From IMG/VR virus record IMGVR_UViG_3300040801_001224, positions 62,001-126,000 of that record: a DNA stretch of 64,000 nucleotides. One strand, written 5' to 3'. This document shows, piece by piece, positions 3,476 to 63,164 of the stretch (positions within the stretch are counted from its first letter, which is position 1; each line of letters begins with the position of its first letter). The translations under genes were made by a program, and so were the position numbers. Below the pieces are notes generated by a model. That model was not told the origin of the DNA and made no database searches. It saw only the letters and a program-made list of their open reading frames with translations.

Positions 3476-4384
3476 ATGGATGGTATTATGGCAAGAGCAA
3501 AAAAGACAAATTATCTTAATAACAAGGATATGTTATTAGAGATACACAAGAGTAAAACGTCATTCTCAGAGTATGATGGCCCTGAGTATGAAACACCCAG
3601 CTACATACTTGAAAATAGAGAAATGGACGTAAAAAAAATTCGTTCAGGTATCTACGAAGTACGTAACCCACAGGAATTATATGACTTTATTACTTCAGAA
3701 GAAGTCATAACAGAAGCAAAAGCTAATCTAGCAAAACGTCTACAACAAGAAGCTTATCAAGCGGCATTAAAATCAAAGCCTGATGAGAAAATCAAGGCAA
3801 ATGAATTTGTTGTAGATCCAGACACGCTAACTAATGATGATCTTGTTTTCCGCGTATTGACATTCGCTCATATACCAGAAGATCTAGAACGTAAAAAGAC
3901 ACATAAAACTGTCGCCGACCGTCACGTTCAATTAAACTTTAATCCCTACAAACATTATGTTATTGATGGCGATAAGTTACGTGAAGTTGGACGTAGTCAT
4001 TATAAGAATGGTGAGTTCGATCCTGAATGCGGCCAGATCACAAATACGTTGGCAAAGATGTTTATGTTACTAGTTGAACGATATGCTGAGCGTTCTAACT
4101 GGCGTGGGTACACTTACATTGATGAAATGAAAGGCCAGGCACTCTTACAATTAAGTCATCGTGGCTTACAATTTGAAGAGATGAAGTCGAATAATCCGTT
4201 CGCATACTTTACCGCGGTTTTGACTAACAGCTTCACCAGGGTGCTAAATATAGAGAAGAATAATCAAAACTTGCGTGACAATCTGCTAGAATCATTTGGG
4301 CAGATGCCAAGCTTTTCACGTCAATTAAAGTATGAAGAAGACGCACGTAAACACCGCGAAGAAATAGACAAAGACAACTTTTAA
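3476..4384 (+). CDS. gp55: Late-transcription sigma factor, T4 gp55-like, with internal insertion
   Basis: NYLNNKDML; KMFMLLVERYAERSNWRGYTYIDEMKGQAL; KSNNPFAYFT; lies immediately upstream of gp47/gp46 as in T4-like phages. Confidence 0.85.
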   Translation: MDGIMARAKKTNYLNNKDMLLEIHKSKTSFSEYDGPEYETPSYILENREMDVKKIRSGIYEVRNPQELYDFITSEEVITEAKANLAKRLQQEAYQAALKSKPDEKIKANEFVVDPDTLTNDDLVFRVLTFAHIPEDLERKKTHKTVADRHVQLNFNPYKHYVIDGDKLREVGRSHYKNGEFDPECGQITNTLAKMFMLLVERYAERSNWRGYTYIDEMKGQALLQLSHRGLQFEEMKSNNPFAYFTAVLTNSFTRVLNIEKNNQNLRDNLLESFGQMPSFSRQLKYEEDARKHREEIDKDNF

Positions 4385-8767: not shown

Positions 8768-8861
8768 ATATTGTATTTATGTGACCAAGAAATAGTGGTG
8801 CTCTGTTCCTGGCACAGATATATACCGGTATAATTACTACAAAAATATTACTAAATAATAC

Positions 8862-11388: not shown

Positions 11389-11431
11389 GATAAATACAAT
11401 AAGCACTCATGCTAATGTATGAGTATTTATC
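11389..11431. promoter_or_regulatory. Face-to-face pair of late-promoter motifs serving the tape-measure (+) and gp26-like (-) genes
   Basis: GATAAATA at 11389-11396 (+) and TATTTATC at 11424-11431 (GATAAATA on -). Confidence 0.6.
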
Positions 11432-11458: not shown

Positions 11459-13909
11459 ATGGCCGAACAATTTGACCAACGTACAGCAGAAGAGCTAGGC
11501 GATTTAAATAAAAACTTAAAAGAGTTAATAGACAAACTTGGATCTTCTTCTGGTGGAGCCACTAAATCCACGTCTTCTAGTGGTATGTCTGCCCTAGCTA
11601 AAGCCGCAGAAGAAGCGGCCAAGCATACTAATGAAGCTACTGAAGAAAAGAAGAAAGAAACAGAGCAAATCAAAGAGATTCATAGAGAAACAGCCAAGCG
11701 CATTGAAGTTACACGTGACTTAACTGATGAAACCAAGAAGTACTTGGAAGAGCATGGTACGATGACTCAGAAGCTTGCTATGATGAATAATAGTTTTGAT
11801 GAGCAAGCATTGGCTTCAGTCAATAAATCTTTTGCTTCAAACTTGGGTCCATTGGGAAAGGGGTTCGAAGATTTTGCTAAAAATAACGCAGTATTAGGCA
11901 CGTCCATAGCAGTTGCAGGCATTGCTGTTGGTGCTTTCGCTGGCAAGGTAATGAATGTCTTAGAATCATTTGATTCATTAGCCAAGAGTGGTGTAACAGT
12001 GGGTGGCGGTTTTGCAGGACTTATGACTGCGTCGGCAGGCCTAAACATGTCAATGGATCAGTTTGCTAGTTTAGCAACAGAACATGCTAGAACAATTAAT
12101 AAATTTGGCATACAAGAATTCCAAGCAGGAGCATTAGGTATACGTGATAGCATGATGGGGTTAGGTTTAACTACATCTGAAACAAGTGAATACTTAGCTG
12201 ATTACTTGGAAACTCAACGCTTAACAGGTGCGATGGCACAGATGTCTGGAAATCAACAAGCACAGGCGGCACAAAGATTAATGAGTCAGACAGATTCATT
12301 AGCAGTAGCATTCGGTGCGTCTAGGGAGGCGGTACTTGACGGTGTTGTGAAAGCGTATGACGATCCAATGATACAGGCAACACTAAGGGGGCTTCCACAA
12401 GGAGCCAAAGAAGCGTTTGACAAGTCGATGGCATTCTTCAGCGCATCTGTGCCGGCAATGGCTGATAGTATCCAGGAACTAATGGGTTCAGCTATTCCTC
12501 AAATGACCGACGCCTACCAGAACGCAATGCAGGCTGGCGTGCCTGGCGTAGCAACTGCTATGATGGAATTCACTAATAATATTAAAGCTGGCATGGATTC
12601 AGAAGAAGCAAGAAATAAATTGCTCAGCAAAATGGCAACGCAGGATACACATCGTTTAAGAATACTTGCTTCTGCAGGTGACGAAAATGCTAAGTCGATG
12701 TTAGCACAGGTGGAACAAGCAAAGCAGGCAATGGAAGCACGTAAACTTGAGACTGAGGCAGAAAAGAAAGCAAGACTTGAGAATCAGAAATCAGCATCCG
12801 GTGTAAGGCAGGCATTTGAACAATTGGGCACATTTGGTGATAAGGTAATGGCTGGATTGCTTGGGTCTTTAGGTGGATCAGGCGGTGTTGAAGCAGGCGT
12901 TAAGAAATTAAGTGGAGTAGTGTCTGATTTTGCCAACTGGCTAGGTGATACAGCAATCCCTTCAGCAATTAAGTTTGGAGAAGCCATGGGGCCTGTTGTA
13001 TCAGGGTTAGGATTAGTAGGTTCAGCGATTGGATCTGTTTTTGGCGTTTTCCGTGATATTGGTGTTGGTCTTGGTGAAGTTGCTGGCCATATTGTTATGA
13101 ATTTTGACGATATAGGGGAAAACTTTAAACACCTTATTAAGGGAATGGGTCTTGCCTTACTTGATATCTTGCCAACCGGTATGTCAGATGGAATTCTTAG
13201 TTTTTTCAATGGCGTTACTGAGATGTTTTCTGGTGTGTCTAGAGCAATTGATAATCTTATGGATGGCGGTAGTATCATAGGCTTCCTAGGTGAAATGTTT
13301 GATGGGTTGTTGCAGATGGTAACCTACCCAATAACAGCTCTAATTGATTATATTGGTGGCACTGATATTTCAGGTATGTTGTCTGAGTTTGGGTTCACTG
13401 GGATGATAATGGAAGGTATTGGTAATCTGTTTGACAAAATAGTTGACACTATTACTAGTATTGAGTTGCCGTCAGTATCAGACCTCATAGGTGGTGAATG
13501 GCTTGGGTTTGGTGGTAATGAAGAAGCAGACGATAATGCTCGATTAAGAATGTTAGCAAGTGCTGGTGACCTTGACGCAAGGGCACAATTAGAACAGCAA
13601 GATTCACCAGGACTGCTCAATAGAATAGGCAACTTCTTTGGCTCAGACGATCAAGCAGAAGTGTTAAGCCCTGCGGCATCGACAGAATTAGCCACAACAA
13701 GCGAAAAAATAAGCCAAATAACACAAGTGTCGGAAAAACAGGACACTGTTGTGACGGAGCAGATAAATACAAACAGAGAAGTAGTTCAATCATCTGGTGA
13801 ACAAATTGCTGTATTAAGAGAAGTAGCGGCTGGGATTAAATCCCTGGCTGACGGCAATAAGAAGATTACAACTGCTATTAAGGAGAACGGCACAACGTTC
13901 TTACGTTAA
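11459..13909 (+). CDS. Probable tape measure protein
   Basis: 816 aa, Ala/Gly-rich, helical with amphipathic repeats; divergent from the gp26-like chaperone gene and upstream of portal. Confidence 0.65.
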   Translation: MAEQFDQRTAEELGDLNKNLKELIDKLGSSSGGATKSTSSSGMSALAKAAEEAAKHTNEATEEKKKETEQIKEIHRETAKRIEVTRDLTDETKKYLEEHGTMTQKLAMMNNSFDEQALASVNKSFASNLGPLGKGFEDFAKNNAVLGTSIAVAGIAVGAFAGKVMNVLESFDSLAKSGVTVGGGFAGLMTASAGLNMSMDQFASLATEHARTINKFGIQEFQAGALGIRDSMMGLGLTTSETSEYLADYLETQRLTGAMAQMSGNQQAQAAQRLMSQTDSLAVAFGASREAVLDGVVKAYDDPMIQATLRGLPQGAKEAFDKSMAFFSASVPAMADSIQELMGSAIPQMTDAYQNAMQAGVPGVATAMMEFTNNIKAGMDSEEARNKLLSKMATQDTHRLRILASAGDENAKSMLAQVEQAKQAMEARKLETEAEKKARLENQKSASGVRQAFEQLGTFGDKVMAGLLGSLGGSGGVEAGVKKLSGVVSDFANWLGDTAIPSAIKFGEAMGPVVSGLGLVGSAIGSVFGVFRDIGVGLGEVAGHIVMNFDDIGENFKHLIKGMGLALLDILPTGMSDGILSFFNGVTEMFSGVSRAIDNLMDGGSIIGFLGEMFDGLLQMVTYPITALIDYIGGTDISGMLSEFGFTGMIMEGIGNLFDKIVDTITSIELPSVSDLIGGEWLGFGGNEEADDNARLRMLASAGDLDARAQLEQQDSPGLLNRIGNFFGSDDQAEVLSPAASTELATTSEKISQITQVSEKQDTVVTEQINTNREVVQSSGEQIAVLREVAAGIKSLADGNKKITTAIKENGTTFLR

Positions 13910-36814: not shown

Positions 36815-37252
36815 ATGGATCAAGACCACGAATACTGGCAGAATTTGGAATACCCAAAGAAGCCAAATCCTACTGAAGTGGAATTATTTACGGAATATTC
36901 TTTTGGTAGTGTGTTATTACTTGGGGAAACCAAGGCCCTTCAACCCCATTGTACTGAAGCTGTGGATATGTTTCCATCAGGTTTTGCTTATCAGGGTGAT
37001 TGGTTTAGATTAGACAAACACTACAACACAATCATAGGCGACGGTGTCATTAATATTACCGGGATGGATCTAGTAGATGCTCTAAAATCAAAATGTGATA
37101 GACTAATCGTTAGAGTGTTTGGCCCAGAGCTTGAGCACAAGTATCCCTGGAAATATGCCAAATATTTTCCTGATACTTTTCCAGGAGCGTTAGATGTGTT
37201 CGAAACGCAACTGGGCTGTAGATTCGTTATCTGGGATTTTACTCGTCCTTAG
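36815..37252 (+). CDS. Possible SAM-dependent methyltransferase-like protein
   Basis: VLLLGET, AVD, GDWF, IIGDGVIN resemble class I MTase motifs; opposite strand to both neighbours. Confidence 0.35.
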   Translation: MDQDHEYWQNLEYPKKPNPTEVELFTEYSFGSVLLLGETKALQPHCTEAVDMFPSGFAYQGDWFRLDKHYNTIIGDGVINITGMDLVDALKSKCDRLIVRVFGPELEHKYPWKYAKYFPDTFPGALDVFETQLGCRFVIWDFTRP

Positions 37253-38270
37253 GACGTACAACTTTACTTAGTGCGACTTTTTCATCAGTTAACGTGCCAT
37301 CAGTATTCTTGGTGATGTTGTCGTTATTGATGAATGTATCAATTGATTTGTTAGTGCCAGTCCATTCCACACGTCTGTCTTTTTCAACATTACGGAAACA
37401 AGATCCTTCCTTACGGAATAAACGGTAAGGGTCAAAGTCAGTGCGTAGGAAATACTCGCCATCCTGTAAATCTTCAGGGAACGCATCACCTTCACCAGCT
37501 AATGGGCAACCATTGTCTGGTATAACATCATCACCCTTCCAGAATACACCAGGAGACCCATCTTCCATTACACCGATGTAGTAATGTTCTGCTTGGAAAT
37601 ACACAGGATCATAAGGAACATTCTCAGCGGCTTCTTCAATAATACCATCTGTGATTTCCTGTTGCTTACACCACGTGCTTAGTTCGTTACGAATGTCGCC
37701 TTCTTCACTGCCATCACCAATAATGTCACGGAACTCTGTGCTATCTGAAATAAGTTTTAAACGAACACGCCAGAAATGCGACCACCAACGTGGACCATAT
37801 CCCTGTCCATAGTTAGCGGCATCTTCAACGACATAGTAACGATTTACAGCACCGCGTTCTTCGTCTAGAGGGTAAAGCTCACGTAAGTGTGGCAGTTCAA
37901 TAACATCGCCTGACATAATCTTACGTCCTAAGCGATCAACCATATTGGATAGATGGAAAACAAGTTGAAGTGTATCATCAGAAAACATCAAGCCAAATTG
38001 CGTAAGATCAAAATCTCTATCACTTGGATCATAGTGGCCACGTAGCTCGTAAATTTCATCATCATAGTTACGTTCACGATTTTCTAAAAACAGTACGTCT
38101 TGTATTGTCGTTTCAGTAACATCACGTGTATCACCATCTTCTAACTTTGGTCCTACATATTTATGGACATAGCATCCAGTAGCACCGAGGTCAGTAACCT
38201 CACCTGCGATTTGGTCTATGAATTTATAATCGTTAGTCTTGTATGGTGACCATAAACTGATCTTTGGCAT
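37239..38270 (-). CDS. gp14: Neck / head-completion protein
   Basis: IQDVLFLENRERNYD, DLTQFGL, RLGRKIMSGDVIELPHL. Confidence 0.75.
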   Translation of the reverse strand: MPKISLWSPYKTNDYKFIDQIAGEVTDLGATGCYVHKYVGPKLEDGDTRDVTETTIQDVLFLENRERNYDDEIYELRGHYDPSDRDFDLTQFGLMFSDDTLQLVFHLSNMVDRLGRKIMSGDVIELPHLRELYPLDEERGAVNRYYVVEDAANYGQGYGPRWWSHFWRVRLKLISDSTEFRDIIGDGSEEGDIRNELSTWCKQQEITDGIIEEAAENVPYDPVYFQAEHYYIGVMEDGSPGVFWKGDDVIPDNGCPLAGEGDAFPEDLQDGEYFLRTDFDPYRLFRKEGSCFRNVEKDRRVEWTGTNKSIDTFINNDNITKNTDGTLTDEKVALSKVVRPKDE

Positions 38271-53696: not shown

Positions 53697-55823
53697 ATGA
53701 AAAAGATACAAGAAAATGGCTTAGACATTGGTTTAGAGTCACATCAATTTCAAATGAAAGCGTCAGCTAAGGCGTTCTCAATTCTTTCAAGTGGTTTGTA
53801 TTCAAATAAAGTACAAGCTGTAATCCGTGAATTATCATGTAATGCGTATGATGCTCAAGTTGAAGCTGGTAACGCAGACCTCCCGTTCGACGTAAAACTT
53901 CCAGACAATAACTATGGCAAGGACACTTTTTATGTTCGTGACTATGGCACTGGTTTAACTGAAGAGCAGATCTACAATGTGTACACAACTTACTTTGAGT
54001 CTACTAAAACAGAATCAAACGATTATGTCGGTGCGTTAGGCTTAGGTTCCAAATCACCATTCTGTTTAACAGATTCTTTTACTGTTGAATCATTTGTTGA
54101 CGGCAAACTATTAACATTCCTGGCTTTCATTGGTAAAGAAGGTATGCCGGAAATATCTAAAGTTGGTGAAGCAGAGACTACTGAATCAAATGGTTTGAAG
54201 GTGTCTTTTGAAACTGACGCGGGTCCTGGAAAGTTTCGTCGAGAAGCCAGGAACCTTTTCAAATGGTTCCCGGTTGTGCCAAATTTCATAACAAATGAAG
54301 AATTGGCCGTTGAAACTGTTGAGCCATTGCGTACATTGAGTGACACTGTTAAGGTTTACCCGGGTAACGTATTCGGTTACGATGAGCGTATCCTTGTGAA
54401 GCAGGGCACAGTGGTTTATCCGATTCCGGAAAGCATTATGCGACAGCATTTTGCGGAATTTGAATATCTATCATCAATGAGATTGGTCATTGAAGTTGAC
54501 CTCGGTCAAGTGGATATCACTGCCAGCCGTGAGTCATTAAGTTTTGTTGAAATGACAGTCACTAACATGAAAGCTAAGTTTCAGGAAATTGACACTTTAG
54601 TTAGAGGTGCAATTACTGAAGAGCTAGATGTGCAGGAGGGTAATATCTGGAAGCTTACTGAAGCGACGGAAAGACTTGGTCATATCTACCCAAGTAGTTT
54701 AATTTGGGAACATGAAATTGTGCGTAGCCATCCACAGTATGATTCTAATGACTTTAGGTTGCCTGAAACCGAGTACCTTAATAAGAAATCTGAAACTGTT
54801 ACTATTAAAAAGTACAGCACATGGAGTAACCGCATTAAGGGCGGATCCGGCAAGGAGTATCCTTTCCATAGTACGTTTGGTAAAGAGGTGACTGTTAAGG
54901 CCAAAACAAATACTGTGTTTATGGTCAACGACACAACTCGTGGACCATTAAATGTTGCTCGAGAGTACTTGAAAAAGAACACTGTTTCACAGCTTATTGT
55001 AATTGATTACGTTAATCGTAGGAATTATTCTAAGCGTGTTGTTAACCGTATTCTGAAGGAGTTCGAGAATCCAACTAACGTAGTGTTTGTTAGTGATTTG
55101 CCTAAACCGACTCGTATGACGACTAAAATTGATCCTAAAGAGATTCGTATCCGCCAAGCAAATAATATGGACGTTCAGTATTGGGATGCAGATTGGACTA
55201 CACGTAGTTACAATGAAGAACGTGACGGTGATGCTTACTTTGTAAACCTGGAACGTTCTACTATTGTGGATGGCGACTTCGATGGAAAGATTGATGAGAT
55301 GAAGCGCATTGTGGAAAACGTATTCCCTAATTTTTACAATAAGGTTAAGGTGTGTGGTATTCCAAAAGCACAAAAGCACAAGTTGGCTAAGGCTGGCATC
55401 GAGCTTAATTCATTCATTGACTTATTGAAAGAAAAAGTTGCTGAGATTACAGTCAACGACATCCGAATTAAGTCATTCATTGACTTGCCAGATTGGGCTG
55501 ACACAGGTGAGTTTAAGAAGGCTTTTGAAAACGGTGACATCACTGAGCCTAGAGTGGTTGAGATGATGACCCGGTACACCCTTTCTTCAGCAAAGTCTAA
55601 GAATGGTGTTAGCAAGCGATACCTGAAGAACTTAGCATTAAGGTTTGGTATCGAGCTTGCTCCGGAAGTCAAAAACTTCCTGGACAAGGATCCTGAAGCT
55701 ACTGAGGATTACCGAGCCAATGTTACTGCTATTGAAGAGTCATTCCCAATGGTTAAGTTCCACAGGGCAGGTTGGAATACAGACGATGCAACAAAAGCGT
55801 TGGTGGATTACTTAAACGGATAA
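53697..55823 (+). CDS. rIIA: rIIA-like protein (GHKL/Hsp90-type ATPase N-terminus)
   Basis: KAFSILSSGLYSNKVQAVIRELSCNAYDA, VRDYGTGL, YFESTK, GALGLGSKSPF, SRESL. Confidence 0.85.
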   Translation: MKKIQENGLDIGLESHQFQMKASAKAFSILSSGLYSNKVQAVIRELSCNAYDAQVEAGNADLPFDVKLPDNNYGKDTFYVRDYGTGLTEEQIYNVYTTYFESTKTESNDYVGALGLGSKSPFCLTDSFTVESFVDGKLLTFLAFIGKEGMPEISKVGEAETTESNGLKVSFETDAGPGKFRREARNLFKWFPVVPNFITNEELAVETVEPLRTLSDTVKVYPGNVFGYDERILVKQGTVVYPIPESIMRQHFAEFEYLSSMRLVIEVDLGQVDITASRESLSFVEMTVTNMKAKFQEIDTLVRGAITEELDVQEGNIWKLTEATERLGHIYPSSLIWEHEIVRSHPQYDSNDFRLPETEYLNKKSETVTIKKYSTWSNRIKGGSGKEYPFHSTFGKEVTVKAKTNTVFMVNDTTRGPLNVAREYLKKNTVSQLIVIDYVNRRNYSKRVVNRILKEFENPTNVVFVSDLPKPTRMTTKIDPKEIRIRQANNMDVQYWDADWTTRSYNEERDGDAYFVNLERSTIVDGDFDGKIDEMKRIVENVFPNFYNKVKVCGIPKAQKHKLAKAGIELNSFIDLLKEKVAEITVNDIRIKSFIDLPDWADTGEFKKAFENGDITEPRVVEMMTRYTLSSAKSKNGVSKRYLKNLALRFGIELAPEVKNFLDKDPEATEDYRANVTAIEESFPMVKFHRAGWNTDDATKALVDYLNG

Positions 55824-55840
55824 TCATAGCGCAAAAACTT

Positions 55841-55891
55841 AACTCCTATTTGATAAATATTGTATAATAACAATATATACAGATAGGAGTT
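55841..55891 (+). promoter_or_regulatory. RBS-sequestering hairpin with a late promoter in the loop (may also terminate rIIA transcripts)
   Basis: AACTCCTAT (55841-55849) pairs with ATAGGAGTT (55883-55891); GATAAATA at 55852-55859. Confidence 0.7.
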
Positions 55892-55898
55892 TTTTTTC

Positions 55899-56693
55899 AT
55901 GTCCAGTTTTCTTGAAATCCGCAATGTTGTGGCTAAAGAAATCGACTTAAACAATTGTGATAAAAAATATGATCACAAATATTTCTTAGCATCAATGTAC
56001 TTTGCCCAGCTAGTCTATTTTCGATGGGAGTTTGTCATCTGTTCATTGAAGTCTTTACCTGGTTATGTTTCTCATGAAATATATGATATAGATGGCGTCC
56101 AAGCATTCATGGTAGAATTTGAGAAAACAGCGTGGGTGTCATTCCGTGGCACTGAAATGAAGATCAACGACTGGAAAACAATCCTTAAATTTTGGCAAAA
56201 CGACTACAATAATACTGAAGCTCATGATGGCTTTGCCAGTGCGTTGAGTAAGATCAAAGATCCCGTACTTCGAAAAATTACACAAATGCGAGTAGCTGGC
56301 AAGAGAATACATTTCGTTGGCCATTCAATGGGTGGCGCTCTAGCTACCCTGTTGGCAATTACCCATAAGCCGGAATCCTTAATTACTTTTGGTTGCCCTA
56401 GAGTACTTAAAGGTGATTACTATAAAGAATACTTTCTTTCATTCCCATTTTTTAGAATGGAAAAGCAATGGGATCCTATCACACACATTCCGTGGGCAAT
56501 GCCATTCATCACAACATATAGACATGTTGGCAAGGCGATTGAAATGCCGGGTGAATTTGCCTTCATAAAAAATCATTTCATCAAATCATATTTAAGAACA
56601 GCATTGAACGAATACTATGCTGAATCAACTGGTATCCCAACATCTTTCGCCAGAGTATCAGCAAGAGATCTAAAGCGTATAAAATCATCTTGA
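55899..56693 (+). CDS. Class 3 lipase (alpha/beta hydrolase)
   Basis: VSFRGT, HDGF, VGHSMGGALA nucleophile motif, TFGCPRV, DPITHIP. Confidence 0.9.
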   Translation: MSSFLEIRNVVAKEIDLNNCDKKYDHKYFLASMYFAQLVYFRWEFVICSLKSLPGYVSHEIYDIDGVQAFMVEFEKTAWVSFRGTEMKINDWKTILKFWQNDYNNTEAHDGFASALSKIKDPVLRKITQMRVAGKRIHFVGHSMGGALATLLAITHKPESLITFGCPRVLKGDYYKEYFLSFPFFRMEKQWDPITHIPWAMPFITTYRHVGKAIEMPGEFAFIKNHFIKSYLRTALNEYYAESTGIPTSFARVSARDLKRIKSS

Positions 56694-56718
56694 CAAAACC
56701 ACTACACTATGTTATAAT
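56690..56718 (+). promoter_or_regulatory. sigma70-type promoter with extended -10
   Basis: TTGACA (56690-56695), 17 bp, TG-N-TATAAT (56713-56718). Confidence 0.85.
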
Positions 56719-56724
56719 GTTAGT

Positions 56725-56889
56725 GTATAGAGGTAAAACTCGTGTGGACGTTCGCGGTGTAAGGGGCTCGTCGGCTGATCTCAATATGAATAACTCAACA
56801 CACCACATACATAGAAGTGTTGACGTTTCTTATAGTAGGCAAAAAACCGCATAATACATGTAAATGACCCTGAGGGTGGTTCTCTATAC
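56725..56889 (+). ncRNA. Candidate ~165-nt rod-like small RNA or structured leader
   Basis: The predicted +1 region GTATAGAG (56725-56732) pairs with CTCTATAC (56882-56889); internal helices GCGGT/ACCGC and TAAGGGGC/GTTTCTTA. Confidence 0.4.
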
Positions 56890-56939
56890 TTGACATCAGA
56901 AATGATGAGTGATCCGCCCACATATATAAAGGAACTAAT

Positions 56940-57413
56940 ATGAGTAAAGAAATCGAACGAAAGTTTTTAGTAAATCAGAAACAATTGCCAGCATTATTTG
57001 ATCCAGACTATATCATCCAGGGATATTTACATTCTGATGAAAACAAATCAATCCGAGTGCGTGTCAACAGTGATGGATATAATGCTAAAGGCACACTGAC
57101 AGTTAAGAGTCGTCGTGTAGGCTTAACCTGTGACGAATATGAATATGAAATCCACCCAGACGATGCTCAAGAAATGCTTGATAATATGTGTGACAAAACA
57201 ATGTGTAAAGAACGCTATTACATCAAGCACGATGATCATATGTGGGAGATTGACGTGTTCCAGGGTGATAGTGAAGGGCTTGTTATTGCTGAAATAGAAC
57301 TGTCTACTGAAGGTGAGAAGTTTCCATTTCCAGACTGGGTTGATGCCGAGATATCAGATGATCCCAAGTATTTGAATGTCAATTTATTGGAAAATCCTTA
57401 TAAAAATTGGTAA
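56940..57413 (+). CDS. CYTH-domain (triphosphate tunnel) enzyme, CyaB-like
   Basis: EIERKFL (ExExK), IQGYL, IRVR, EYEYEI, KERY, WEIDVF, AEIEL, PDW..EISDDPKY. Confidence 0.92.
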   Translation: MSKEIERKFLVNQKQLPALFDPDYIIQGYLHSDENKSIRVRVNSDGYNAKGTLTVKSRRVGLTCDEYEYEIHPDDAQEMLDNMCDKTMCKERYYIKHDDHMWEIDVFQGDSEGLVIAEIELSTEGEKFPFPDWVDAEISDDPKYLNVNLLENPYKNW

Positions 57414-57423
57414 TTTACATTCT

Positions 57424-57450
57424 GTAACATTCGTAACATTCGTAACACTT
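57424..57450. repeat. Three tandem 9-bp repeats upstream of flagellin
   Basis: GTAACATTC GTAACATTC GTAACACTT. Confidence 0.8.
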
Positions 57451-57498
57451 AACAGGCTCAAAATACCCGTAACCGACCCAAAACCAGGGTACTCAAAG

Positions 57499-57506
57499 CA
57501 TAAATA
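57499..57506 (+). promoter_or_regulatory. Late-promoter-like motif upstream of flagellin
   Basis: CATAAATA, one mismatch to the local GATAAATA consensus, 36 nt before the ATG. Confidence 0.5.
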
Positions 57507-57542
57507 AAAGTGTAGAGCATATATAATCGAGGAGAAAGGAAT

Positions 57543-58358
57543 ATGATTACTATTAATTCAAACACATTGGCTTCATCTATTAGTAATAACTTTAATAGTA
57601 TTAGCAAGCGCATCGATGATGTTTCACGTTCAATTGCGTCAGGCAAGAGAATTAACTCAGCTAAGGATGACCCTGCTGGCTTATTCCAAGCAAACGCATT
57701 ACGCACACAGACGAGCTCATACAACGTAGTTCGCAATAACTTAACATTTGGTACTTCACTATTGGAAACAGCAAGTTCAGCATTAAGCACAGTCGTAAAT
57801 GACTTGGGCAAGATGCGTGACCTAGCTGTCCAGGCGGCAAGTGGCACACTTTCAACAGAAGGTCGTGCGGCACTACAGGCAACATTTGCAGAATACCAGT
57901 CACAGATTGATGATACGGTATCTAACGCATCAGTATTCGGCCAGAACTTAGTTTCGGCGGCCGCGGCAGATGTTGATATCCAGTCAGGCATCAACGCAGG
58001 TCAGACAACTACCGTTACAGCGGCGGCTTCAGATGCTACGACATTGGGTGTTAATGCGTTAGACTTAACTTCAGAAGCAAATGCGTCAGCGGCTATCACA
58101 GCCATTGATACTGCTATTGCTACGGCCGGTACTAACCAGTCTACGTTTGGTGCCCAGTTAAATCGCATTGAATCAATTGACGCAAATGTGGCTAACATTG
58201 TTGAAAATTTAGAATCAGCACGTTCACGTATTGAGGATGCTGATGTAGCACAGCTAACAACAGACCTAGCACAGTTGCAGGTTCAACAGCAGTTAGCGTC
58301 AGCAATGTTAGGAATTGCTAACCAGTTACCACAGAGCTTCTTAACACTATTACGTTAA
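57543..58358 (+). CDS. fliC: Flagellin (minimal, D0/D1 only)
   Basis: SGKRINSAKDDPAG, MRDLAVQAASGT, FGAQLNR, NLESARSRIEDAD, ANQLPQSFLTLLR. Confidence 0.95.
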   Translation: MITINSNTLASSISNNFNSISKRIDDVSRSIASGKRINSAKDDPAGLFQANALRTQTSSYNVVRNNLTFGTSLLETASSALSTVVNDLGKMRDLAVQAASGTLSTEGRAALQATFAEYQSQIDDTVSNASVFGQNLVSAAAADVDIQSGINAGQTTTVTAAASDATTLGVNALDLTSEANASAAITAIDTAIATAGTNQSTFGAQLNRIESIDANVANIVENLESARSRIEDADVAQLTTDLAQLQVQQQLASAMLGIANQLPQSFLTLLR

Positions 58359-58371
58359 AGGGTGAATAACA

Positions 58372-58722
58372 ATGGACGTTGGCCAAGTTAAATCACAGTA
58401 TAGCTTAGTAGCAGGGAATAAAGGAGACATCAAACCTCCCGAGCCTCCTAAAGGAACTGCTACTGAACCGCTCGTTCGTGATTACAGCATTGAAGAGATG
58501 CAGGATTTGGCTCGGGCGGCAAATGCTTCTATGCCCAATAGTAGTATTCGTTTTAAGATTGATGAACAAGGCGAGCCGCCTATCATTGTCATTATTGATC
58601 CAGAAACAGATGAAATAGTAAGACAGATACCTCCAGAAGAGATTCAAAATATCAGAGATATGGTTGAGTCTCTTCAAAATGGAGAAAGTTACATAACTAA
58701 TTTTATAGATAGGTACGCATAA
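58372..58722 (+). CDS. flaG: FlaG-like flagellar protein
   Basis: IRFKIDE...IVIIDPETDEIVRQIPPEE; directly after flagellin. Confidence 0.88.
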   Translation: MDVGQVKSQYSLVAGNKGDIKPPEPPKGTATEPLVRDYSIEEMQDLARAANASMPNSSIRFKIDEQGEPPIIVIIDPETDEIVRQIPPEEIQNIRDMVESLQNGESYITNFIDRYA

Positions 58723-59072
58723 TGAATACAGGCATAGATGCTTATAAAAAAGTTTCAGTAGAAACATCCACTCCGGAAGATCTTTCAATGAAGGTCATTA
58801 ACAGTATCCTTTCATACATTAAGGAAGCACAACTCCTGCCATTGGAGACACCAAAGTACAAAGAGTGTTTACTTAATGCTCAGATGCTTTGTGTGGGCGC
58901 CATATTTAGTCTATCAGGCAATGAGCGCACAAAGGCTAATGTTGTACTGACTAACGTATTTGACAGTGTTCAAAGTGAACTATTGCTTGTTTTAAAAGAT
59001 GGTACCGGTGACCTAAACCAATGTAAGCGTCTACTAAGCCTATTAACTGAAAAGCCAGAATACATAGGATAG
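58722..59072 (+). CDS. fliS: FliS-like flagellin export chaperone (divergent)
   Basis: N-terminal AYKKVSVETSTPEDL motif; helical; position after fliC-flaG; TAATG coupling. Confidence 0.72.
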   Translation: MNTGIDAYKKVSVETSTPEDLSMKVINSILSYIKEAQLLPLETPKYKECLLNAQMLCVGAIFSLSGNERTKANVVLTNVFDSVQSELLLVLKDGTGDLNQCKRLLSLLTEKPEYIG

Positions 59073-59113
59073 TGATAAATAAGTGTACTAATAACCATTT
59101 AATGGAGTACACA

Positions 59114-59755
59114 ATGAAATATATATTACTTGCGATTACACTTGCCTTCACACTTATCACACAAGCAAGTGATGAAAAATCCGTTAATCAAATACCACAA
59201 GCGGCGACTAAGTCACTTGATAGGCTACTTAAATCACAAGACAACAGCGCCGAAGCTCGCTTAAAGAGACAAGTCATCCAGCTACAGAATGAACTTCGCT
59301 CAGCCAATCGAGCTTATTACGCATTGTCTAAAGAAAACGAAGATCTTAGAATTCAACTTGAAGCATCACAGCAATCTGAAGCATATGCCGAACCTGAAGA
59401 AGAATTATATACAGCTGAGCAAGTTGAAGAACTAGTCCAGAACGCACAGAACGAAGTGTGGTCAGACAGCATGATCTACAGAATTGCTGAGCGTGAATAC
59501 TTACTGGCTCAAGACAATATCGTTCATGGAAAATTTATAGTAGAAGATATGTTAGCTTCAGATTATGCTAACCTACGCTCAGTATATGGCGAAGATTTTG
59601 ATTTTAGCTCTTATGTAGGTAAAGCAGTTGAAGAGTACAGAACTTACTTTGAAGCCAGATTCCCGCGTGGTGAAGAGTTACATAAAGCAACCACTGAAAT
59701 ATTATCAGCAATGTGTACAGTGGGTCCACAAGAACCAGAATTAGGAATTGAATAA
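59114..59755 (+). CDS. Secreted/periplasmic coiled-coil protein
   Basis: MKYILLAITLAFTLITQA signal peptide; GGAG RBS; GATAAATA at 59074-59081. Confidence 0.65.
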   Translation: MKYILLAITLAFTLITQASDEKSVNQIPQAATKSLDRLLKSQDNSAEARLKRQVIQLQNELRSANRAYYALSKENEDLRIQLEASQQSEAYAEPEEELYTAEQVEELVQNAQNEVWSDSMIYRIAEREYLLAQDNIVHGKFIVEDMLASDYANLRSVYGEDFDFSSYVGKAVEEYRTYFEARFPRGEELHKATTEILSAMCTVGPQEPELGIE

Positions 59756-59758
59756 AAA

Positions 59759-60214
59759 ATGCCACCAGAAGATAACAGAGAAGGTATTCTATTAGAAATA
59801 TCACCAATACAGTTTGTGAGTGTAGTTGGAACAATAGCATCTGCTATCGTTGGCGTTACTATATATGTTGTTTTAAACTACACACCACTCAACTCGCACA
59901 CGACTCTATCACAGAAACATGATGCTCTATCAGGAAAGACTACTACGATTATCGAAGAGAACGCAAAGGTGCCAGTGGCACTGGACGTTATGTCCAGTAA
60001 AATCGTTGATCTAACCCAAGACATTGACAGCAAAATAGCAGAAGTTGAAGAAAGAAATCTAACCCTACGTAGGAATGTGTTGATACGTATCAAGGACGAC
60101 GTTGGCGGTGTTGCCAACATGAAAAAAGAACATCGTGCTGAACTACGTGACATTGAAGACATTATGCTACAGCAAGGATACTTATCCCCAGCCTCGAGGA
60201 CACAGGGCCTGTAA
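59759..60214 (+). CDS. Single-pass membrane protein with coiled coil
   Basis: IQFVSVVGTIASAIVGVTIYVVL hydrophobic helix, then a heptad-like region. Confidence 0.6.
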   Translation: MPPEDNREGILLEISPIQFVSVVGTIASAIVGVTIYVVLNYTPLNSHTTLSQKHDALSGKTTTIIEENAKVPVALDVMSSKIVDLTQDIDSKIAEVEERNLTLRRNVLIRIKDDVGGVANMKKEHRAELRDIEDIMLQQGYLSPASRTQGL

Positions 60215-60220
60215 AATAGG

Positions 60221-60249
60221 TTGACAGCACCACTTATTTGTAGTATAAT
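60221..60249 (+). promoter_or_regulatory. sigma70-type promoter
   Basis: TTGACA, 17 bp, TATAAT. Confidence 0.85.
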
Positions 60250-60366
60250 ATATACATAAATAAGGAGACTGTGTGAGACAGGTTTTCAAATACCGCCACC
60301 ACAAGATACGTAGTATACAAAAGTGGGGCAAAAATTCACCAACTAGGAAACACAAGGAGCCTAGTA

Positions 60367-60774
60367 ATGATGAAGCACAACTACATAGCAGTACTACAGG
60401 AAAGACTAAGTCGGTTTAACGGTGACATAGAAGTAACAGTTAAAGATGACTGTTTAATACTGGATGGAGTTACTCAAAAAGTACACTCAATGTTACAGCT
60501 TCAGTTTAGAGCACCGCATTATATGGATGATGTAGGAAGAACAGTTGTGCCATTTGAAGATCCTTTGGCACGTATCTTGACGAGCAACGAACACGCTCTT
60601 CTCGACGAGCTTATTGATGGCCTCTCTCTTCCCTTATTGTTAGTAAACTTTGGTATCAGAGAATATGATCCTAAAATGGGTTATATAAAATTTGTATCCG
60701 AGGAAGATATTTTCGCAATGGAGTTCCGCATGATTGAGAACGCCATTGATCATGAAGATACCTTAATGGTTTGA
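60367..60774 (+). CDS. Hypothetical protein
   Basis: 135-aa ORF with an AAGGAG RBS. Confidence 0.6.
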   Translation: MMKHNYIAVLQERLSRFNGDIEVTVKDDCLILDGVTQKVHSMLQLQFRAPHYMDDVGRTVVPFEDPLARILTSNEHALLDELIDGLSLPLLLVNFGIREYDPKMGYIKFVSEEDIFAMEFRMIENAIDHEDTLMV

Positions 60775-62078: not shown

Positions 62079-62453
62079 GGCGTTCGGATAAGGGCTGGTA
62101 TCCCGGAGAACTCACTGGCTGAAGAAGCTATAGACCTCCTTAAGTGCCATTGCGTAAAGCATAAATCAGTTCGCCGTTTTAATTCGATGAAGTAATTTAA
62201 TGATACTGTGGACGCCAGTTCGAATCTGGCCATCTCCACCAAATCTATGGGGATGAATTAGGTTTCGACAGGGTATACTGAGAATTATGGAGAATCAGTC
62301 AATGCTAAAGGCTGTGAGGATTGGGAGTAACACCTTTAATGGTGCTCGGTCGAAGAAGCAAAAAAATAATTGAAAATGATGAAATTTTCGCATTAGCGGC
62401 ATAGACCGTTAACGGGGTTTTACACCGTCTTCCTTGTTATCAAAAGACGGTGT
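62079..62453 (+). ncRNA. ssrA: Circularly permuted (two-piece) tmRNA; outer boundaries approximate
   Basis: T-arm GCCAG-TTCGAAT-CTGGC plus CATCTCC-A-CCA ends at 62241; 7-nt spacer; GGGGATG starts at 62249 (G3.U pair); tag ORF ENDEIFALAA* at 62372-62404. Confidence 0.9.
62422..62453. terminator. Hairpin at the tmRNA 3' end, overlapping the convergent gene stop
   Basis: ACACCGTCTT (62422-62431) / AAGACGGTGT (62444-62453). Confidence 0.6.
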
Positions 62454-63096
62454 CTTTATGTATGCTATAGTGTTGGCGTAACCCGTTCACTGACTTTTCT
62501 TCTCCGCAAATAATACAAGAACATTTTATTCTGCTACTATTATTTTTAGAAATTTTTTCTCTGGTAGTTTTGGATAATTTTCTTCCCTTCCCTTGCCCAG
62601 TGCGATCTATGTTTCTTATCTTCGGGTCATGCATTGGGTTGTTGTTTTTTAATCGTTCCGAAGCTTGCCGGCGTTGTTCGTTAGTCCATTCGTACCCTCC
62701 ACCACCTGGTCTAGATACTCCTTTATTTGACTCAGATATTTTTCTTTTGTGTTCTTCAGAAAAAGATCGTCCAGTATTGGCCTGACTTATTGTTTTTTTG
62801 TGTTCGTCAGATATTACCCTCGGTCCACCATCTGTTCCGTTTTCTATAGCAAGATTTGCCCATTCTTTTGATTCTACGATTTGGTTTAGCTTTGAAAAAA
62901 GTGTAGAAAATCTTTTTAGCTTTTCTAAGCTTTTGAATTCCTTATACCACAAGGTATCGATAAATTTGCCGTGTTTCTTGATGTGACGTAACCAGTATTT
63001 GCCCGATCCGGCATATTTAGTCGGCTCATTTTTTGTCTTGCCGAAATATTTGAGCCCGGTTTTCTGGTGCTGTTTTATATATAGATAAATACTCAT
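62440..63096 (-). CDS. GIY-YIG (Seg-like) homing endonuclease with NUMOD3-like repeats
   Basis: IYLYIKQHQKTGLKYFGKT, YAGSG, WANL..ENG..GG, SDEHKKTIS / SEEHKRKIS; likely start MSIYLY at 63096 after AGGAG. Confidence 0.8.
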   Translation of the reverse strand: MSIYLYIKQHQKTGLKYFGKTKNEPTKYAGSGKYWLRHIKKHGKFIDTLWYKEFKSLEKLKRFSTLFSKLNQIVESKEWANLAIENGTDGGPRVISDEHKKTISQANTGRSFSEEHKRKISESNKGVSRPGGGGYEWTNEQRRQASERLKNNNPMHDPKIRNIDRTGQGKGRKLSKTTREKISKNNSSRIKCSCIICGEEKSVNGLRQHYSIHKDTVF

Positions 63097-63100
63097 GCTG

Positions 63101-63164
63101 ATACTCCTATTCAGTATTAGAGTAGTCGGATACGCCAATATCGCGGACTACATTTTTATTTATC
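63101..63164 (-). promoter_or_regulatory. Late promoter plus structured leader of the homing endonuclease
   Basis: GATAAATA (- strand, 63157-63164); GTAGTC/GACTAC stem with inner GATA/TATC; competing TACTC/GAGTA stem over the RBS. Confidence 0.5.

What the first reader, a model, noticed from the sequence alone, without database searches (positions are those of the whole stretch)
57499..57545. Flagellin appears rewired from sigma28 control to the phage late programme
Seen: no TAAA-N15-GCCGATAA sigma28 promoter and no TTGACA-linked -10 in 57414-57542. Instead there is CATAAATA (the same variant precedes the EndoII-like gene at 8774-8781) and a double RBS (GAGGAG, AAGGA). Known: bacterial flagellin genes are typically sigma28- or sigma54-driven. 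Inference: the gene is domesticated and strongly expressed together with virion genes, which raises the possibility that it is a virion component or decoy filament rather than only a host-filament subunit.
Basis: partly seen in the sequence, partly recalled or inferred. Interest (0 to 1): 0.6.

Follow-up and report, generated by a model that had tools for sequence, protein, structure and literature searches.

The report
Phage flagellin operon behind late-type promoter
A 328-kb uncultured jumbo phage related to Pseudomonas phage PA5oct carries its own flagellin, FlaG and FliS-like genes, which lack any host flagellar promoter and sit behind a conserved variant of the phage's T4-style late promoter, so the phage probably feeds subunits into the host's flagellum rather than into its own particle.

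Summary
The sequence facts hold. CATAAATA is at 57499-57506, 36 nt before the flagellin ATG (57543). No sigma28, sigma54 or -35-linked sigma70 promoter in 57414-57542 scores above chance, whereas bacterial relatives of this flagellin score 10-11/12 for sigma28.

This phage's upstream motif is GATAAATA: 99 copies, 70 placed 4-70 nt before a start codon. CATAAATA alone is not enriched (5/28, P=0.13).

Comparison rescues the site:
- Three syntenic phages carry TATAAATA at the aligned position, and the ATAAATA block is invariant.
- The phage encodes a gp55-family late sigma.
- In PA5oct, GATAAATA precedes six virion genes confirmed by mass spectrometry.

A late-type promoter is therefore likely, but two limits apply. 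No terminator separates the gene from the strong early promoter at 56690, so early read-through is also expected. No transcript data exist.

The "double RBS" is an ordinary AGGAGAA-type Shine-Dalgarno.

The virion or decoy idea is not supported. The gene heads a fliC-flaG-fliS-like operon, which points to export through the host flagellar apparatus.

Homologues at 45-84% identity are common in metagenomes. Every close context examined is phage-like (18 flagellin homologues, several nearly identical); one more distant relative (40% identity) on the same side of the tree is bacterial.

A GTAACA repeat unique in this genome, replaced by a covarying GUAAYA hairpin in distant relatives, hints at extra flagellin-specific control.

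The parts
3476..4384 (+). gp55-family late sigma factor gene (302 aa)
   Evidence: phrog_12791 'sigma factor for late transcription' 3.7e-73 and phrog_234 9e-22. T4 gp55 matches here at E 3.9e-6. It is 50% identical to the PA5oct late sigma.
56690..56718 (+). Early sigma70-type promoter TTGACA-N17-TATAAT with ACCACT in the spacer
   Evidence: 12/12 match. It belongs to a genome-wide class of about 90 such promoters. An equivalent promoter is present in L009, L010 and L011 before the CYTH gene.
56719..56939 (+). Conserved about 220-nt 5' leader of the CYTH gene
   Evidence: Sequence blocks are conserved in L009, L010 and L011. There is no Rfam match. The structure was not resolved with four sequences.
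56940..57413 (+). CYTH-domain gene, directly upstream and co-oriented
   Evidence: Pfam CYTH 1.3e-6; phrog_6660 2.9e-19. It is syntenic in L009 and L010.
57424..57449 (+). Three tandem GTAACATTC/GTAACACT repeats
   Evidence: This is the only such tandem in the 328-kb genome. It is conserved at the same place in L009, L010 and L011. GTAAYA recurs as a hairpin loop in distant phage flagellin leaders.
57499..57506 (+). CATAAATA, a late-promoter-like element (variant of the family consensus GATAAATA)
   Evidence: It lies 36 nt before the ATG. The ATAAATA core is invariant in the four-phage alignment, and the relatives carry TATAAATA. From the family spacing, the inferred start is G57512. This is an inference; no transcript data exist.
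57522..57527 (+). Isolated TATAAT hexamer without a -35 element
   Evidence: Read directly from the sequence. This stretch differs among the relatives. A start from it would fall inside the SD, so it is judged fortuitous.
57529..57534 (+). Shine-Dalgarno GAGGAG, 8 nt before the ATG
   Evidence: AGGAGAA is the most enriched upstream 7-mer in this genome. It is invariant in the relatives.
57543..58358 (+). Flagellin (271 aa, D0-D1 only)
   Evidence: Pfam Flagellin_N 90.8 bits and Flagellin_C 65.7 bits. More than 60 homologues at 45-84% identity are all 271-275 aa.
58372..58722 (+). FlaG-family gene
   Evidence: Pfam FlaG 47 bits against a cut-off of 23.8. The same gene follows the flagellin in L004, L005, L009, L010, L011 and L012.
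58722..59072 (+). FliS-like four-helix protein (probable flagellin export chaperone)
   Evidence: The only PDB sequence hits are FliS (5maw_E, E 0.015). Pfam FliS is full length but below cut-off (13.6 bits). The AF2 model has pLDDT 84 and its top Foldseek hits are FliS chains at TM 0.62-0.67. The complex with the flagellin C-terminus has weak support.
59074..59081 (+). Consensus GATAAATA late-type promoter of the next gene; it marks the end of the flagellin operon
   Evidence: the L010 orthologue also has GATAAATA. A hairpin at 59083-59112 pairs the SD in read-through RNA but not in the predicted late RNA.
59114..59755 (+). Secreted or membrane protein of unknown function (signal-peptide-like N-terminus)
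   Evidence: ORF and N-terminus read. No Pfam or PHROG family was found.

Best explanation
The flagellin gene heads a phage-borne fliC-flaG-fliS-like operon in an uncultured jumbo phage of the PA5oct (Arenbergviridae) lineage.

It has no host-type flagellar promoter. It is most likely transcribed by host RNA polymerase carrying the phage's gp55-family late sigma. The site used would be CATAAATA, a weak-position variant of the family's late promoter GATAAATA, with a start about 5 nt downstream near G57512.

Read-through from the early sigma70 promoter at 56690, across the CYTH gene, probably contributes as well.

The products most likely work on the host's flagellum. The FliS-like protein would hand the phage flagellin to the host flagellar type III export gate, and FlaG would modulate the filament. 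In this way filament synthesis could continue, or its composition change, once host sigma28-dependent transcription is lost in the infected cell.

What is shown: the genes, the motifs, their conservation, and the absence of host promoter types. What is inferred: promoter activity, timing, export, and the benefit to the phage.
For: Promoter class.
- GATAAATA has 99 copies, 70 lying 4-70 nt upstream of starts (P about 7e-45). There is no conserved -35 element.
- The pattern T-A follows 4 nt after the motif, and about 12 cases are GATAAATA-N5-ATG. This puts the start 5 nt after the motif, as at T4 late promoters (T4 facts from PMC2988020).
- In the window the motif precedes a tail-fibre gene (46199) and a virion structural gene (37239-38270, minus strand).
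- In PA5oct (major capsid protein 78.6% identical), it lies 19-42 nt before six virion genes confirmed by mass spectrometry.
- A gp55-family sigma is present.

The first base varies.
- In T4, the base at -13 deviates at nine of 50 sites (PMC2988020).
- The orthologous head-scaffold promoter reads TATAAATA in PA5oct and AATAAATA in this genome.

The site itself.
- ATAAATA is a block of seven invariant columns in an otherwise 72%-identical intergenic alignment of four syntenic phages.
- NATAAATA occurs within 220 nt upstream of the flagellin gene in 11 of 17 phage loci. About 1.2 sites would be expected from the loci's own density.

Host promoters are absent, and the phage has no FliA-type sigma.

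Operon and export.
- FlaG and FliS-like genes follow directly.
- The FliS-flagellin complex scored 0.41, against 0.00 for the best control. The tool rates this as weak support. Its mark was reached by 58 of 80 solved and 2 of 110 mismatched pairs, but at 0.60 or under by only 7 of the 80 solved pairs and by both mismatches. The runs agree in at least 82% of contacts, and the partner pLDDT is at least 61.
- A related flagellin-bearing phage contig also encodes MCP and CheW.
Against: - There are no transcript data: no RNA run holds this locus.
- CATAAATA is not enriched in promoter positions in this genome (5/28, P=0.13). C replaces the most frequent base of the motif.
- The relatives' TATAAATA is preceded by a TAGTATA(C/A)T -10-like element, so conservation there might reflect a sigma70-type or tandem promoter. 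The window has lost that element.
- No terminator or SD-masking structure shields the gene from the early promoter.
- No gp45-type clamp was found, and gp33 was not searched. The T4 activation mechanism is therefore not established here. The same gap is reported for phage CBB (PMC5259590).
- The FliS assignment is below Pfam's cut-off, and the complex prediction is only weak.
- The conserved GTAACA repeats lie upstream of the proposed start. This is hard to reconcile with an RNA-level role unless longer read-through transcripts matter.
Confidence: 0.6

Rival explanations
1. Early read-through only. The flagellin operon is simply the distal part of the early transcript from the sigma70 promoter at 56690, and CATAAATA is a non-functional, decayed remnant of the relatives' promoter.
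For: - A perfect early promoter lies 0.8 kb upstream, with no terminator between it and the gene.
- The C variant is not enriched genome-wide.
- The window has lost the adjacent -10-like element present in the relatives and carries a 10-nt insertion.
- The GTAACA repeats would be included in such a transcript.
Against: - The ATAAATA core is invariant across four phages, while the flanks diverge.
- The late-type motif recurs before flagellin genes of distant phages that lack the CYTH gene.
- Position -13 demonstrably varies at conserved late sites in this family.
Confidence: 0.2
2. Dedicated regulator. Expression is governed mainly by a flagellin-specific factor that recognises GTAAYA, as DNA repeats in this lineage and as an RNA hairpin loop in distant ones. 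The generic late programme would then be only a platform.
For: - The triple repeat is unique in the genome and conserved in relatives.
- In eight distant loci GUAAYA is the loop of a 5-bp stem. 90% of cells are paired, 11 cells show changes on both sides, and 0 of 500 shuffles reach the observed score.
- 13 of 17 phage flagellin upstream regions contain GTAAYA.
Against: - No candidate binding protein was identified.
- The element sits on opposite sides of the NATAAATA motif in the two groups.
- The hexamer is short and AT-rich.
- This reading is not exclusive of the late-promoter reading.
Confidence: 0.25
3. The host flagellar regulon still drives the gene, through a divergent sigma28 or sigma54 promoter of the unknown host.
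For: - The host is unknown, so its consensus could differ.
- A phage copy that branches near the base of the tree (L030) has a weak sigma28-like TAAAG ... GGATAA arrangement.
Against: - The best sigma28 and sigma54 scores are at shuffle level.
- Bacterial relatives are clearly recognisable with the same scan at 10-11/12.
- No GG-N10-GC arrangement is present.
Confidence: 0.03
4. The flagellin is a virion component or forms a decoy filament.
For: - The gene has a late-type promoter, like virion genes.
- The gene neighbourhood contains structural genes further upstream.
Against: - The gene is linked to FlaG and a FliS-like chaperone.
- The canonical flagellin termini are conserved.
- The closest cultured relative, PA5oct, has 93 virion proteins identified by mass spectrometry, and its paper never mentions flagella.
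- The locus lies between rIIA, lipase and CYTH genes, not within a structural module.
Confidence: 0.05

Closest known systems
T4-type late promoters (TATAAATA, gp55/gp33/gp45) and the ATAAATA motif of Rak2/CBB-like jumbo phages
   Same: - An 8-bp AT-rich element at the -10 position with no -35 element.
- A start about 5 nt downstream.
- A gp55-family sigma is encoded.
- The motif precedes structural genes.
- The first base is the variable one (PMC2988020). CBB and GAP32 likewise have a gp55-like sigma, the ATAAATA motif, and no detectable gp33 or gp45 (PMC5259590).
   Different: - The family consensus starts with G, and the flagellin site with C.
- The sigma is 302 aa against 185 aa in T4.
- No gp45-type clamp was detected.
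- About 12 sites are arranged as leaderless N5-ATG.
- Activity and timing are untested.
Prophage-encoded flagellin FliC_P with TldR (Enterobacter and others; PMC13418256)
   Same: A phage carries its own divergent flagellin that is assembled by the host apparatus and changes the filament.
   Different: - That system is temperate. It represses the host fliC through an RNA-guided TnpB-derived TldR, and it acts in lysogens.
- Here the phage looks lytic and T4-like (rIIA, gp55-family sigma, PA5oct kin).
- No TnpB-like gene lies nearby.
- The gene is linked to FlaG and FliS-like genes and to a late-type promoter.
Bacterial fliC/flaG/fliD/fliS late flagellar operons under sigma28
   Same: The gene content is similar (flagellin, FlaG, FliS), and the flagellin has the canonical D0-D1 architecture.
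   Different: - There is no sigma28 promoter and no fliD.
- No other flagellar gene was found in the genome.
- The module is embedded between phage genes.
Viral 'motility AMGs' listed in metagenome surveys (for example fliC and motA in PMC13035462)
   Same: Flagellin genes on viral contigs.
   Different: Those are catalogue entries, without analysis of operon, promoter or lineage.

Membership tests
T4-type (gp55-dependent) late promoter | 8-bp TATAAATA-like element at about -13 to -6 with no -35 requirement | tested here: met
   CATAAATA matches 7/8, with the mismatch at the first and most variable base. No -35 element is conserved. The aligned relatives carry TATAAATA.
T4-type (gp55-dependent) late promoter | Phage encodes a gp55-family sigma | tested here: met
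   Window 3476-4384: phrog_12791 3.7e-73 and a T4 gp55 hit at 3.9e-6.
T4-type (gp55-dependent) late promoter | Sliding-clamp (gp45) and gp33 co-activation | tested here: inconclusive
   The T4 gp45 protein and Pfam DNA_PPF find nothing in the genome. gp33 was not searched. Divergent clamps could escape both searches.
T4-type (gp55-dependent) late promoter | Mapped start site and late, replication-coupled timing | not testable with these tools
   No RNA run holds the locus, and the phage is uncultured.
T4-type (gp55-dependent) late promoter | This exact 8-mer is over-represented at promoter positions in the genome | tested here: not met
   CATAAATA is 5/28 against a 9.7% background (P=0.13). 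GATAAATA is 70/99.
Flagellin (FliC/Hag family) | Flagellin_N and Flagellin_C domains above Pfam cut-offs; conserved terminal motifs | tested here: met
   90.8 and 65.7 bits against cut-offs of 26.6 and 23. 17 columns are invariant across 34 homologues, including the N-terminal G..I....D..AG positions and the C-terminal L.L positions; P44 and the final R are nearly invariant.
Flagellin (FliC/Hag family) | Export by the flagellar T3SS and polymerisation into a filament | not testable with these tools
   Inferred from the linked FlaG and FliS-like genes only.
FliS flagellin chaperone | Match to the FliS family model above threshold | tested here: not met
   Pfam FliS scores 13.6 bits against a cut-off of 26.7 (E 0.085), although the alignment is full length. 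PDB phmmer hits only FliS, at E 0.015.
FliS flagellin chaperone | Four-helix-bundle FliS fold | tested here: met
   AF2 model pLDDT 84.1 and pTM 0.79. The Foldseek top four are FliS chains at TM 0.62-0.67. All E-values are above 0.001 and generic helical bundles follow in the list.
FliS flagellin chaperone | Binds the C-terminal segment of its flagellin | tested here: inconclusive
   Complex prediction gave weak support: 0.41 against a best control of 0.00.
Sigma28 (FliA)-dependent flagellin promoter | TAAA-N15-GCCGATAA upstream of the gene | tested here: not met
   The best match is 8/12, which is shuffle level. Bacterial relatives score 10-11/12.
Prophage FliC_P/TldR flagellar remodelling system | Adjacent TnpB-derived TldR gene with guide RNA targeting the host fliC promoter | tested here: not met
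   Ten neighbouring ORFs between 53697 and 61482 give rIIA, lipase, CYTH, FlaG or no family. No TnpB-like domain was found.

The most novel reading that the evidence does not exclude
A widespread lineage of mostly lytic, often jumbo, phages carries its own minimal flagellin with FlaG and a FliS-like chaperone, and in some members also MCP and CheW. It expresses them from phage late-type promoters under an additional flagellin-specific GUAAYA element read by an unknown factor. The phage would thereby take over filament synthesis to keep the infected cell swimming, or to change its filament surface, until lysis. This would be a viral motility programme distinct from the prophage TldR system.
Probability: 0.3. 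Interest if true: 0.75.

Novelty: new variant of a known kind. Interest (0 to 1): 0.55.

Why it matters
- Phage-encoded flagellins have been studied only in prophages that repress the host gene. Here the module sits in a T4-like lytic jumbo phage, with phage-type control signals.
- Homologues at 45-84% identity are numerous in metagenomes, yet absent from the 50,697 deposited phage genomes searched.
- If the late-type promoter works, flagellar filament synthesis would be a function that some phages deliberately maintain or alter during infection. That bears on how infected cells disperse in mats and sediments, and on competition with flagellum-binding phages.
- As a by-product, the analysis suggests that GATAAATA is the late-promoter consensus of the PA5oct family. 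The published PA5oct transcriptome paper lists only sigma70-like promoters.

Tried and rejected
- Megablast of 56600-59200 and tblastn of the flagellin against the deposited phage genomes gave no match.
- The search for related loci with the single protein found nothing. It worked only with an alignment.
- An Rfam scan of 55500-60500 gave nothing relevant.
- A search for sequencing runs found only DNA runs from a microbial mat and a sediment. Read laying was therefore not used, and no transcript evidence could be obtained.
- Folding of the intergenic region and of the predicted 5' UTR gave no significant structure, terminator or SD occlusion.
- RNAalifold on mixed distant leaders misaligned the two subgroups. 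The hairpin was therefore tested on a motif-anchored alignment.
- Covariation in the CYTH leader could not be judged with four sequences.
- The idea that the two GGA motifs are CsrA sites was rejected, because the second GGA is not conserved in relatives.
- Sigma54 was rejected: the only GG...GC arrangement has the wrong spacing.
- CtrA-like TTAA-N7-TTAA was rejected, because the repeat period is 9 nt.
- A search for other flagellar or chemotaxis genes in the genome found no rod or hook proteins, and only a sub-threshold MCPsignal hit in a coiled-coil protein.
- Complex prediction for FliS-like protein with the flagellin C-terminus gave weak support only.
- Clean monophyly of phage flagellins was rejected. 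P0064 lies on the phage side of the tree but comes from a bacterial context with MotY and sigma28-type promoters.

Full report
**What the window is.** The window is bases 62001-126000 of a 328,096-bp IMG/VR virus record with terminal repeats and 40% G+C. Its DNA is held by microbial-mat metagenome runs.

The gene order is late sigma, SbcD, SbcC, portal, protease, major capsid, tail fibres. The major capsid protein is 78.6% identical to that of Pseudomonas phage PA5oct (Arenbergviridae), and the late sigma is 50% identical. These place it as an uncultured relative of that jumbo phage.

**The locus.**
- 53697-55823 is rIIA.
- 55899-56693 is a class-3 lipase.
- 56940-57413 is a CYTH-domain protein.
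- 57543-58358 is a 271-aa flagellin. Both Pfam flagellin domains score well above their cut-offs.
- 58372-58722 is FlaG.
- 58722-59072 is a 116-aa protein.

The 116-aa protein looks like FliS on several weak but concordant lines:
- Its only PDB sequence matches are FliS (E 0.015).
- Its Pfam FliS match is full length but below threshold.
- Its AF2 model (pLDDT 84) finds FliS chains as the top four Foldseek hits, at TM 0.62-0.67.
- A complex prediction with the flagellin C-terminus gave only weak support. The score was 0.41 against a best control of 0.00. The tool's mark was reached by 58 of 80 solved and 2 of 110 mismatched pairs, but scores of 0.60 or under are rated weak. The runs agree in at least 82% of contacts, and the partner pLDDT is at least 61.

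No other flagellar gene was found in the genome.

**Checking the observation.** CATAAATA is at 57499-57506, 36 nt from the ATG.

In 57414-57542 the best sigma28, sigma70 and sigma54 matches are 8/12, 8/12 and 7/11, which is shuffle level. The scan does work: flagellin genes of bacterial relatives (a Halomonas genome and a low-GC contig carrying MotY) score 10-11/12 for TAAA-N15-GCCGATAA. Seventeen phage copies score 7-9. The phage encodes no Sigma70_r2/r4 protein.

The 'double RBS' is the ordinary SD of this genome. AGGAGAA is the most enriched upstream 7-mer and is invariant in relatives. The extra AAGGA is 2 nt from the ATG and is not conserved.

**The phage's own promoter classes.** Using a crude gene call of 489 genes, two upstream signals stand out.

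The first is a class of about 90 strong sigma70-type promoters, (GTGG)TTGACA-nnACCACTTT...TATAAT. One of them is at 56690-56718 and another at 60221.

The second is GATAAATA:
- It has 99 copies, 78 on the plus strand and 70 lying 4-70 nt upstream of a start. Composition-matched permuted 8-mers fall there 10.8% of the time (P about 7e-45).
- There is no -35 signal. A T is preferred just before the motif, and T-A follows 4 nt after it.
- About 12 cases are GATAAATA-N5-ATG, which implies a start 5 nt after the motif and leaderless mRNAs. This geometry equals that of T4 late promoters (PMC2988020).
- In the window the motif precedes a tail-fibre gene and a virion structural gene.
- In 41 kb of PA5oct it lies 19-42 nt before six virion genes confirmed by mass spectrometry.

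The phage has a gp55-family sigma of 302 aa. No gp45-type clamp was detected. The same situation is reported for the jumbo phage CBB, which also has an ATAAATA motif before structural genes (PMC5259590).

I therefore read GATAAATA as the late-promoter consensus of this family. That reading is an inference from position and homology, not from RNA data.

**Is the flagellin's C variant meaningful?** Taken alone, it is not. CATAAATA is promoter-placed in 5 of 28 copies (P=0.13). TATAAATA is placed in 12 of 32 (P=2e-4), and AATAAATA in 2 of 32.

Two comparative results change the picture.

First, three syntenic metagenomic phages share the order CYTH, flagellin, FlaG and (where the contig extends) a further FliS-like gene; L011 also shows a 716-aa ORF and a lipase in the rIIA and lipase positions. 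Their flagellins are 79-84% identical (L009, L010, L011). They carry TATAAATA 24-37 nt before the ATG. In the four-way alignment the ATAAATA core is seven invariant columns. Together with the GTAACA repeats and the SD, it is one of three conserved blocks.

Second, the first base demonstrably varies at conserved late sites. The promoter before the orthologous head-scaffold gene (36% identity, E 3e-30) reads TATAAATA in PA5oct and AATAAATA here. In T4, the base at -13 deviates at nine of 50 sites (PMC2988020).

More widely, NATAAATA lies within 220 nt upstream of the flagellin gene in 11 of 17 non-redundant phage loci. About 1.2 sites would be expected from those loci's own density. Several of these loci are related to one another, so they represent roughly seven independent lineages.

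**What limits the claim.**
- In the relatives, TATAAATA is preceded by TAGTATA(C/A)T-N3, a -10-like element that the window has lost. Part of the conservation could therefore reflect a sigma70-type or tandem promoter.
- The perfect early promoter at 56690 lies upstream on the same strand, and all three relatives have one too.
- No terminator is predicted between it and the flagellin, and no structure masks the SD.
- Read-through expression before the late phase is therefore likely.
- No RNA data exist for this locus.

**Flagellin lineage.**
- The word-index search found more than 60 proteins at 45-84% identity, all 271-275 aa.
- Every close context examined is phage-like. That covers nine flagellin homologues looked up on metagenome contigs and nine IMG/VR loci whose flagellins entered the tree, several of them nearly identical. 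It includes a 318-kb and a 137-kb viral contig.
- In a quick maximum-likelihood tree, a branch with SH-aLRT 99 separates 75 rows that hold all 17 phage-context rows then labelled from 54 rows that hold all eight bacterial-labelled rows.
- The phage side also contains P0064. Its context (MotY, TilS, two flagellins with sigma28 promoters) is bacterial. The lineage is therefore not cleanly monophyletic and may point to the donor group.
- No deposited phage genome has this flagellin.
- The studied precedent for a phage flagellin is the prophage FliC_P/TldR system (PMC13418256). Viral fliC is otherwise only listed in surveys (PMC13035462).

**Function.** Three observations bear on function: the FlaG and FliS-like genes, the conserved flagellin termini, and the position of the module outside the structural gene blocks. 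They argue for export through the host flagellar apparatus into the host filament, and against a virion role. One related phage contig also encodes MCP and CheW.

The most economical reading is that the phage sustains or alters the filament once host sigma28-dependent transcription fails. The benefit to the phage (motility of the infected cell, or a changed filament surface) is speculation.

**An unexplained element.** GTAACATTC occurs three times in tandem at 57424-57449. This is the only such tandem in the genome, and it is conserved in the three relatives.

In eight more distant phage flagellin leaders, GUAAYA is the loop of a 5-bp stem that covaries. 90% of cells are paired, four pairs show compensatory changes, and 0 of 500 shuffles reach the observed score. 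Slid controls reach at most 47.5% paired.

There the hairpin lies between the NATAAATA motif and the SD. In the window group the repeats lie upstream of the motif. I could not identify what reads this element.

**Verdict.**
- The rewiring away from sigma28 is well supported.
- The late-promoter assignment is plausible, at about 0.6, and rests on conservation rather than expression data.
- Early read-through is not excluded.
- The virion or decoy inference is unlikely.

Noticed in passing
whole genome; in the window for example 52879 (+) and 8781-8774 (-): There are about 12 GATAAATA-N5-ATG arrangements and several TATAAT-N5/6-ATG arrangements. Both late-type and early promoters therefore appear to give leaderless mRNAs that start at the A of the ATG.
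   Followed up: partly
window 56719-56939: A leader of about 220 nt lies between the early promoter and the CYTH gene. Its sequence blocks are conserved in three related phages and it has no Rfam match, so it is a candidate cis-regulatory RNA. Four sequences were too few to judge covariation.
   Followed up: partly
window 59074-59116: A consensus GATAAATA is followed by a hairpin (-9.7 kcal/mol, z -2.67) that pairs the SD of ORF 59114. The predicted late start, A59087, lies inside the 5' arm. Only late transcripts would then expose the SD, as at the T4 soc, e and I-TevI genes. The hairpin is not evident in the L010 orthologue.
   Followed up: partly
window 63164 (-) before 62440-63138 (-); also genome 15113 (-), 230439 (-), and near 305752: A repeated element occurs in which GATAAATA is followed by a conserved stem (GTAGTCCGCG ... 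GACTAC) and TCTAATACTG. It lies in front of lone minus-strand genes. The one in the window has a NUMOD3 motif, so these look like homing-endonuclease cassettes with a shared leader.
   Followed up: partly
L007:2547-4698 (96.8-kb metagenome contig): A phage-like contig carrying a flagellin of this lineage also encodes a methyl-accepting chemotaxis protein (4HB_MCP_1 plus MCPsignal) and CheW.
   Followed up: no
L014, L016, L019, L020, L022, L024, L025 and L007, 24-54 nt before the flagellin ATG: A covarying 5-bp hairpin with loop GUAAYA lies in the flagellin 5' leaders. In five of these loci a second hairpin with loop UUAAnU follows it. No known RNA family was matched to it.
   Followed up: partly
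L028 (PA5oct 65844-107034): GATAAATA lies 19-42 nt upstream of six virion genes confirmed by mass spectrometry. The published PA5oct analysis reports only TTGAC/TATAATA promoters, so a late-promoter class may be undescribed for that phage.
   Followed up: partly
L030:5800-6000: One phage copy that branches near the base of the flagellin tree is oriented against its neighbours. It keeps a weak sigma28-like TAAAG ... GGATAA arrangement, possibly a less rewired state.
   Followed up: no
window 11459-13909: An 816-aa protein has no family match except a sub-threshold MCPsignal-like coiled-coil hit. It is preceded by back-to-back GATAAATA sites at 11389 (+) and 11431 (-).
   Followed up: no
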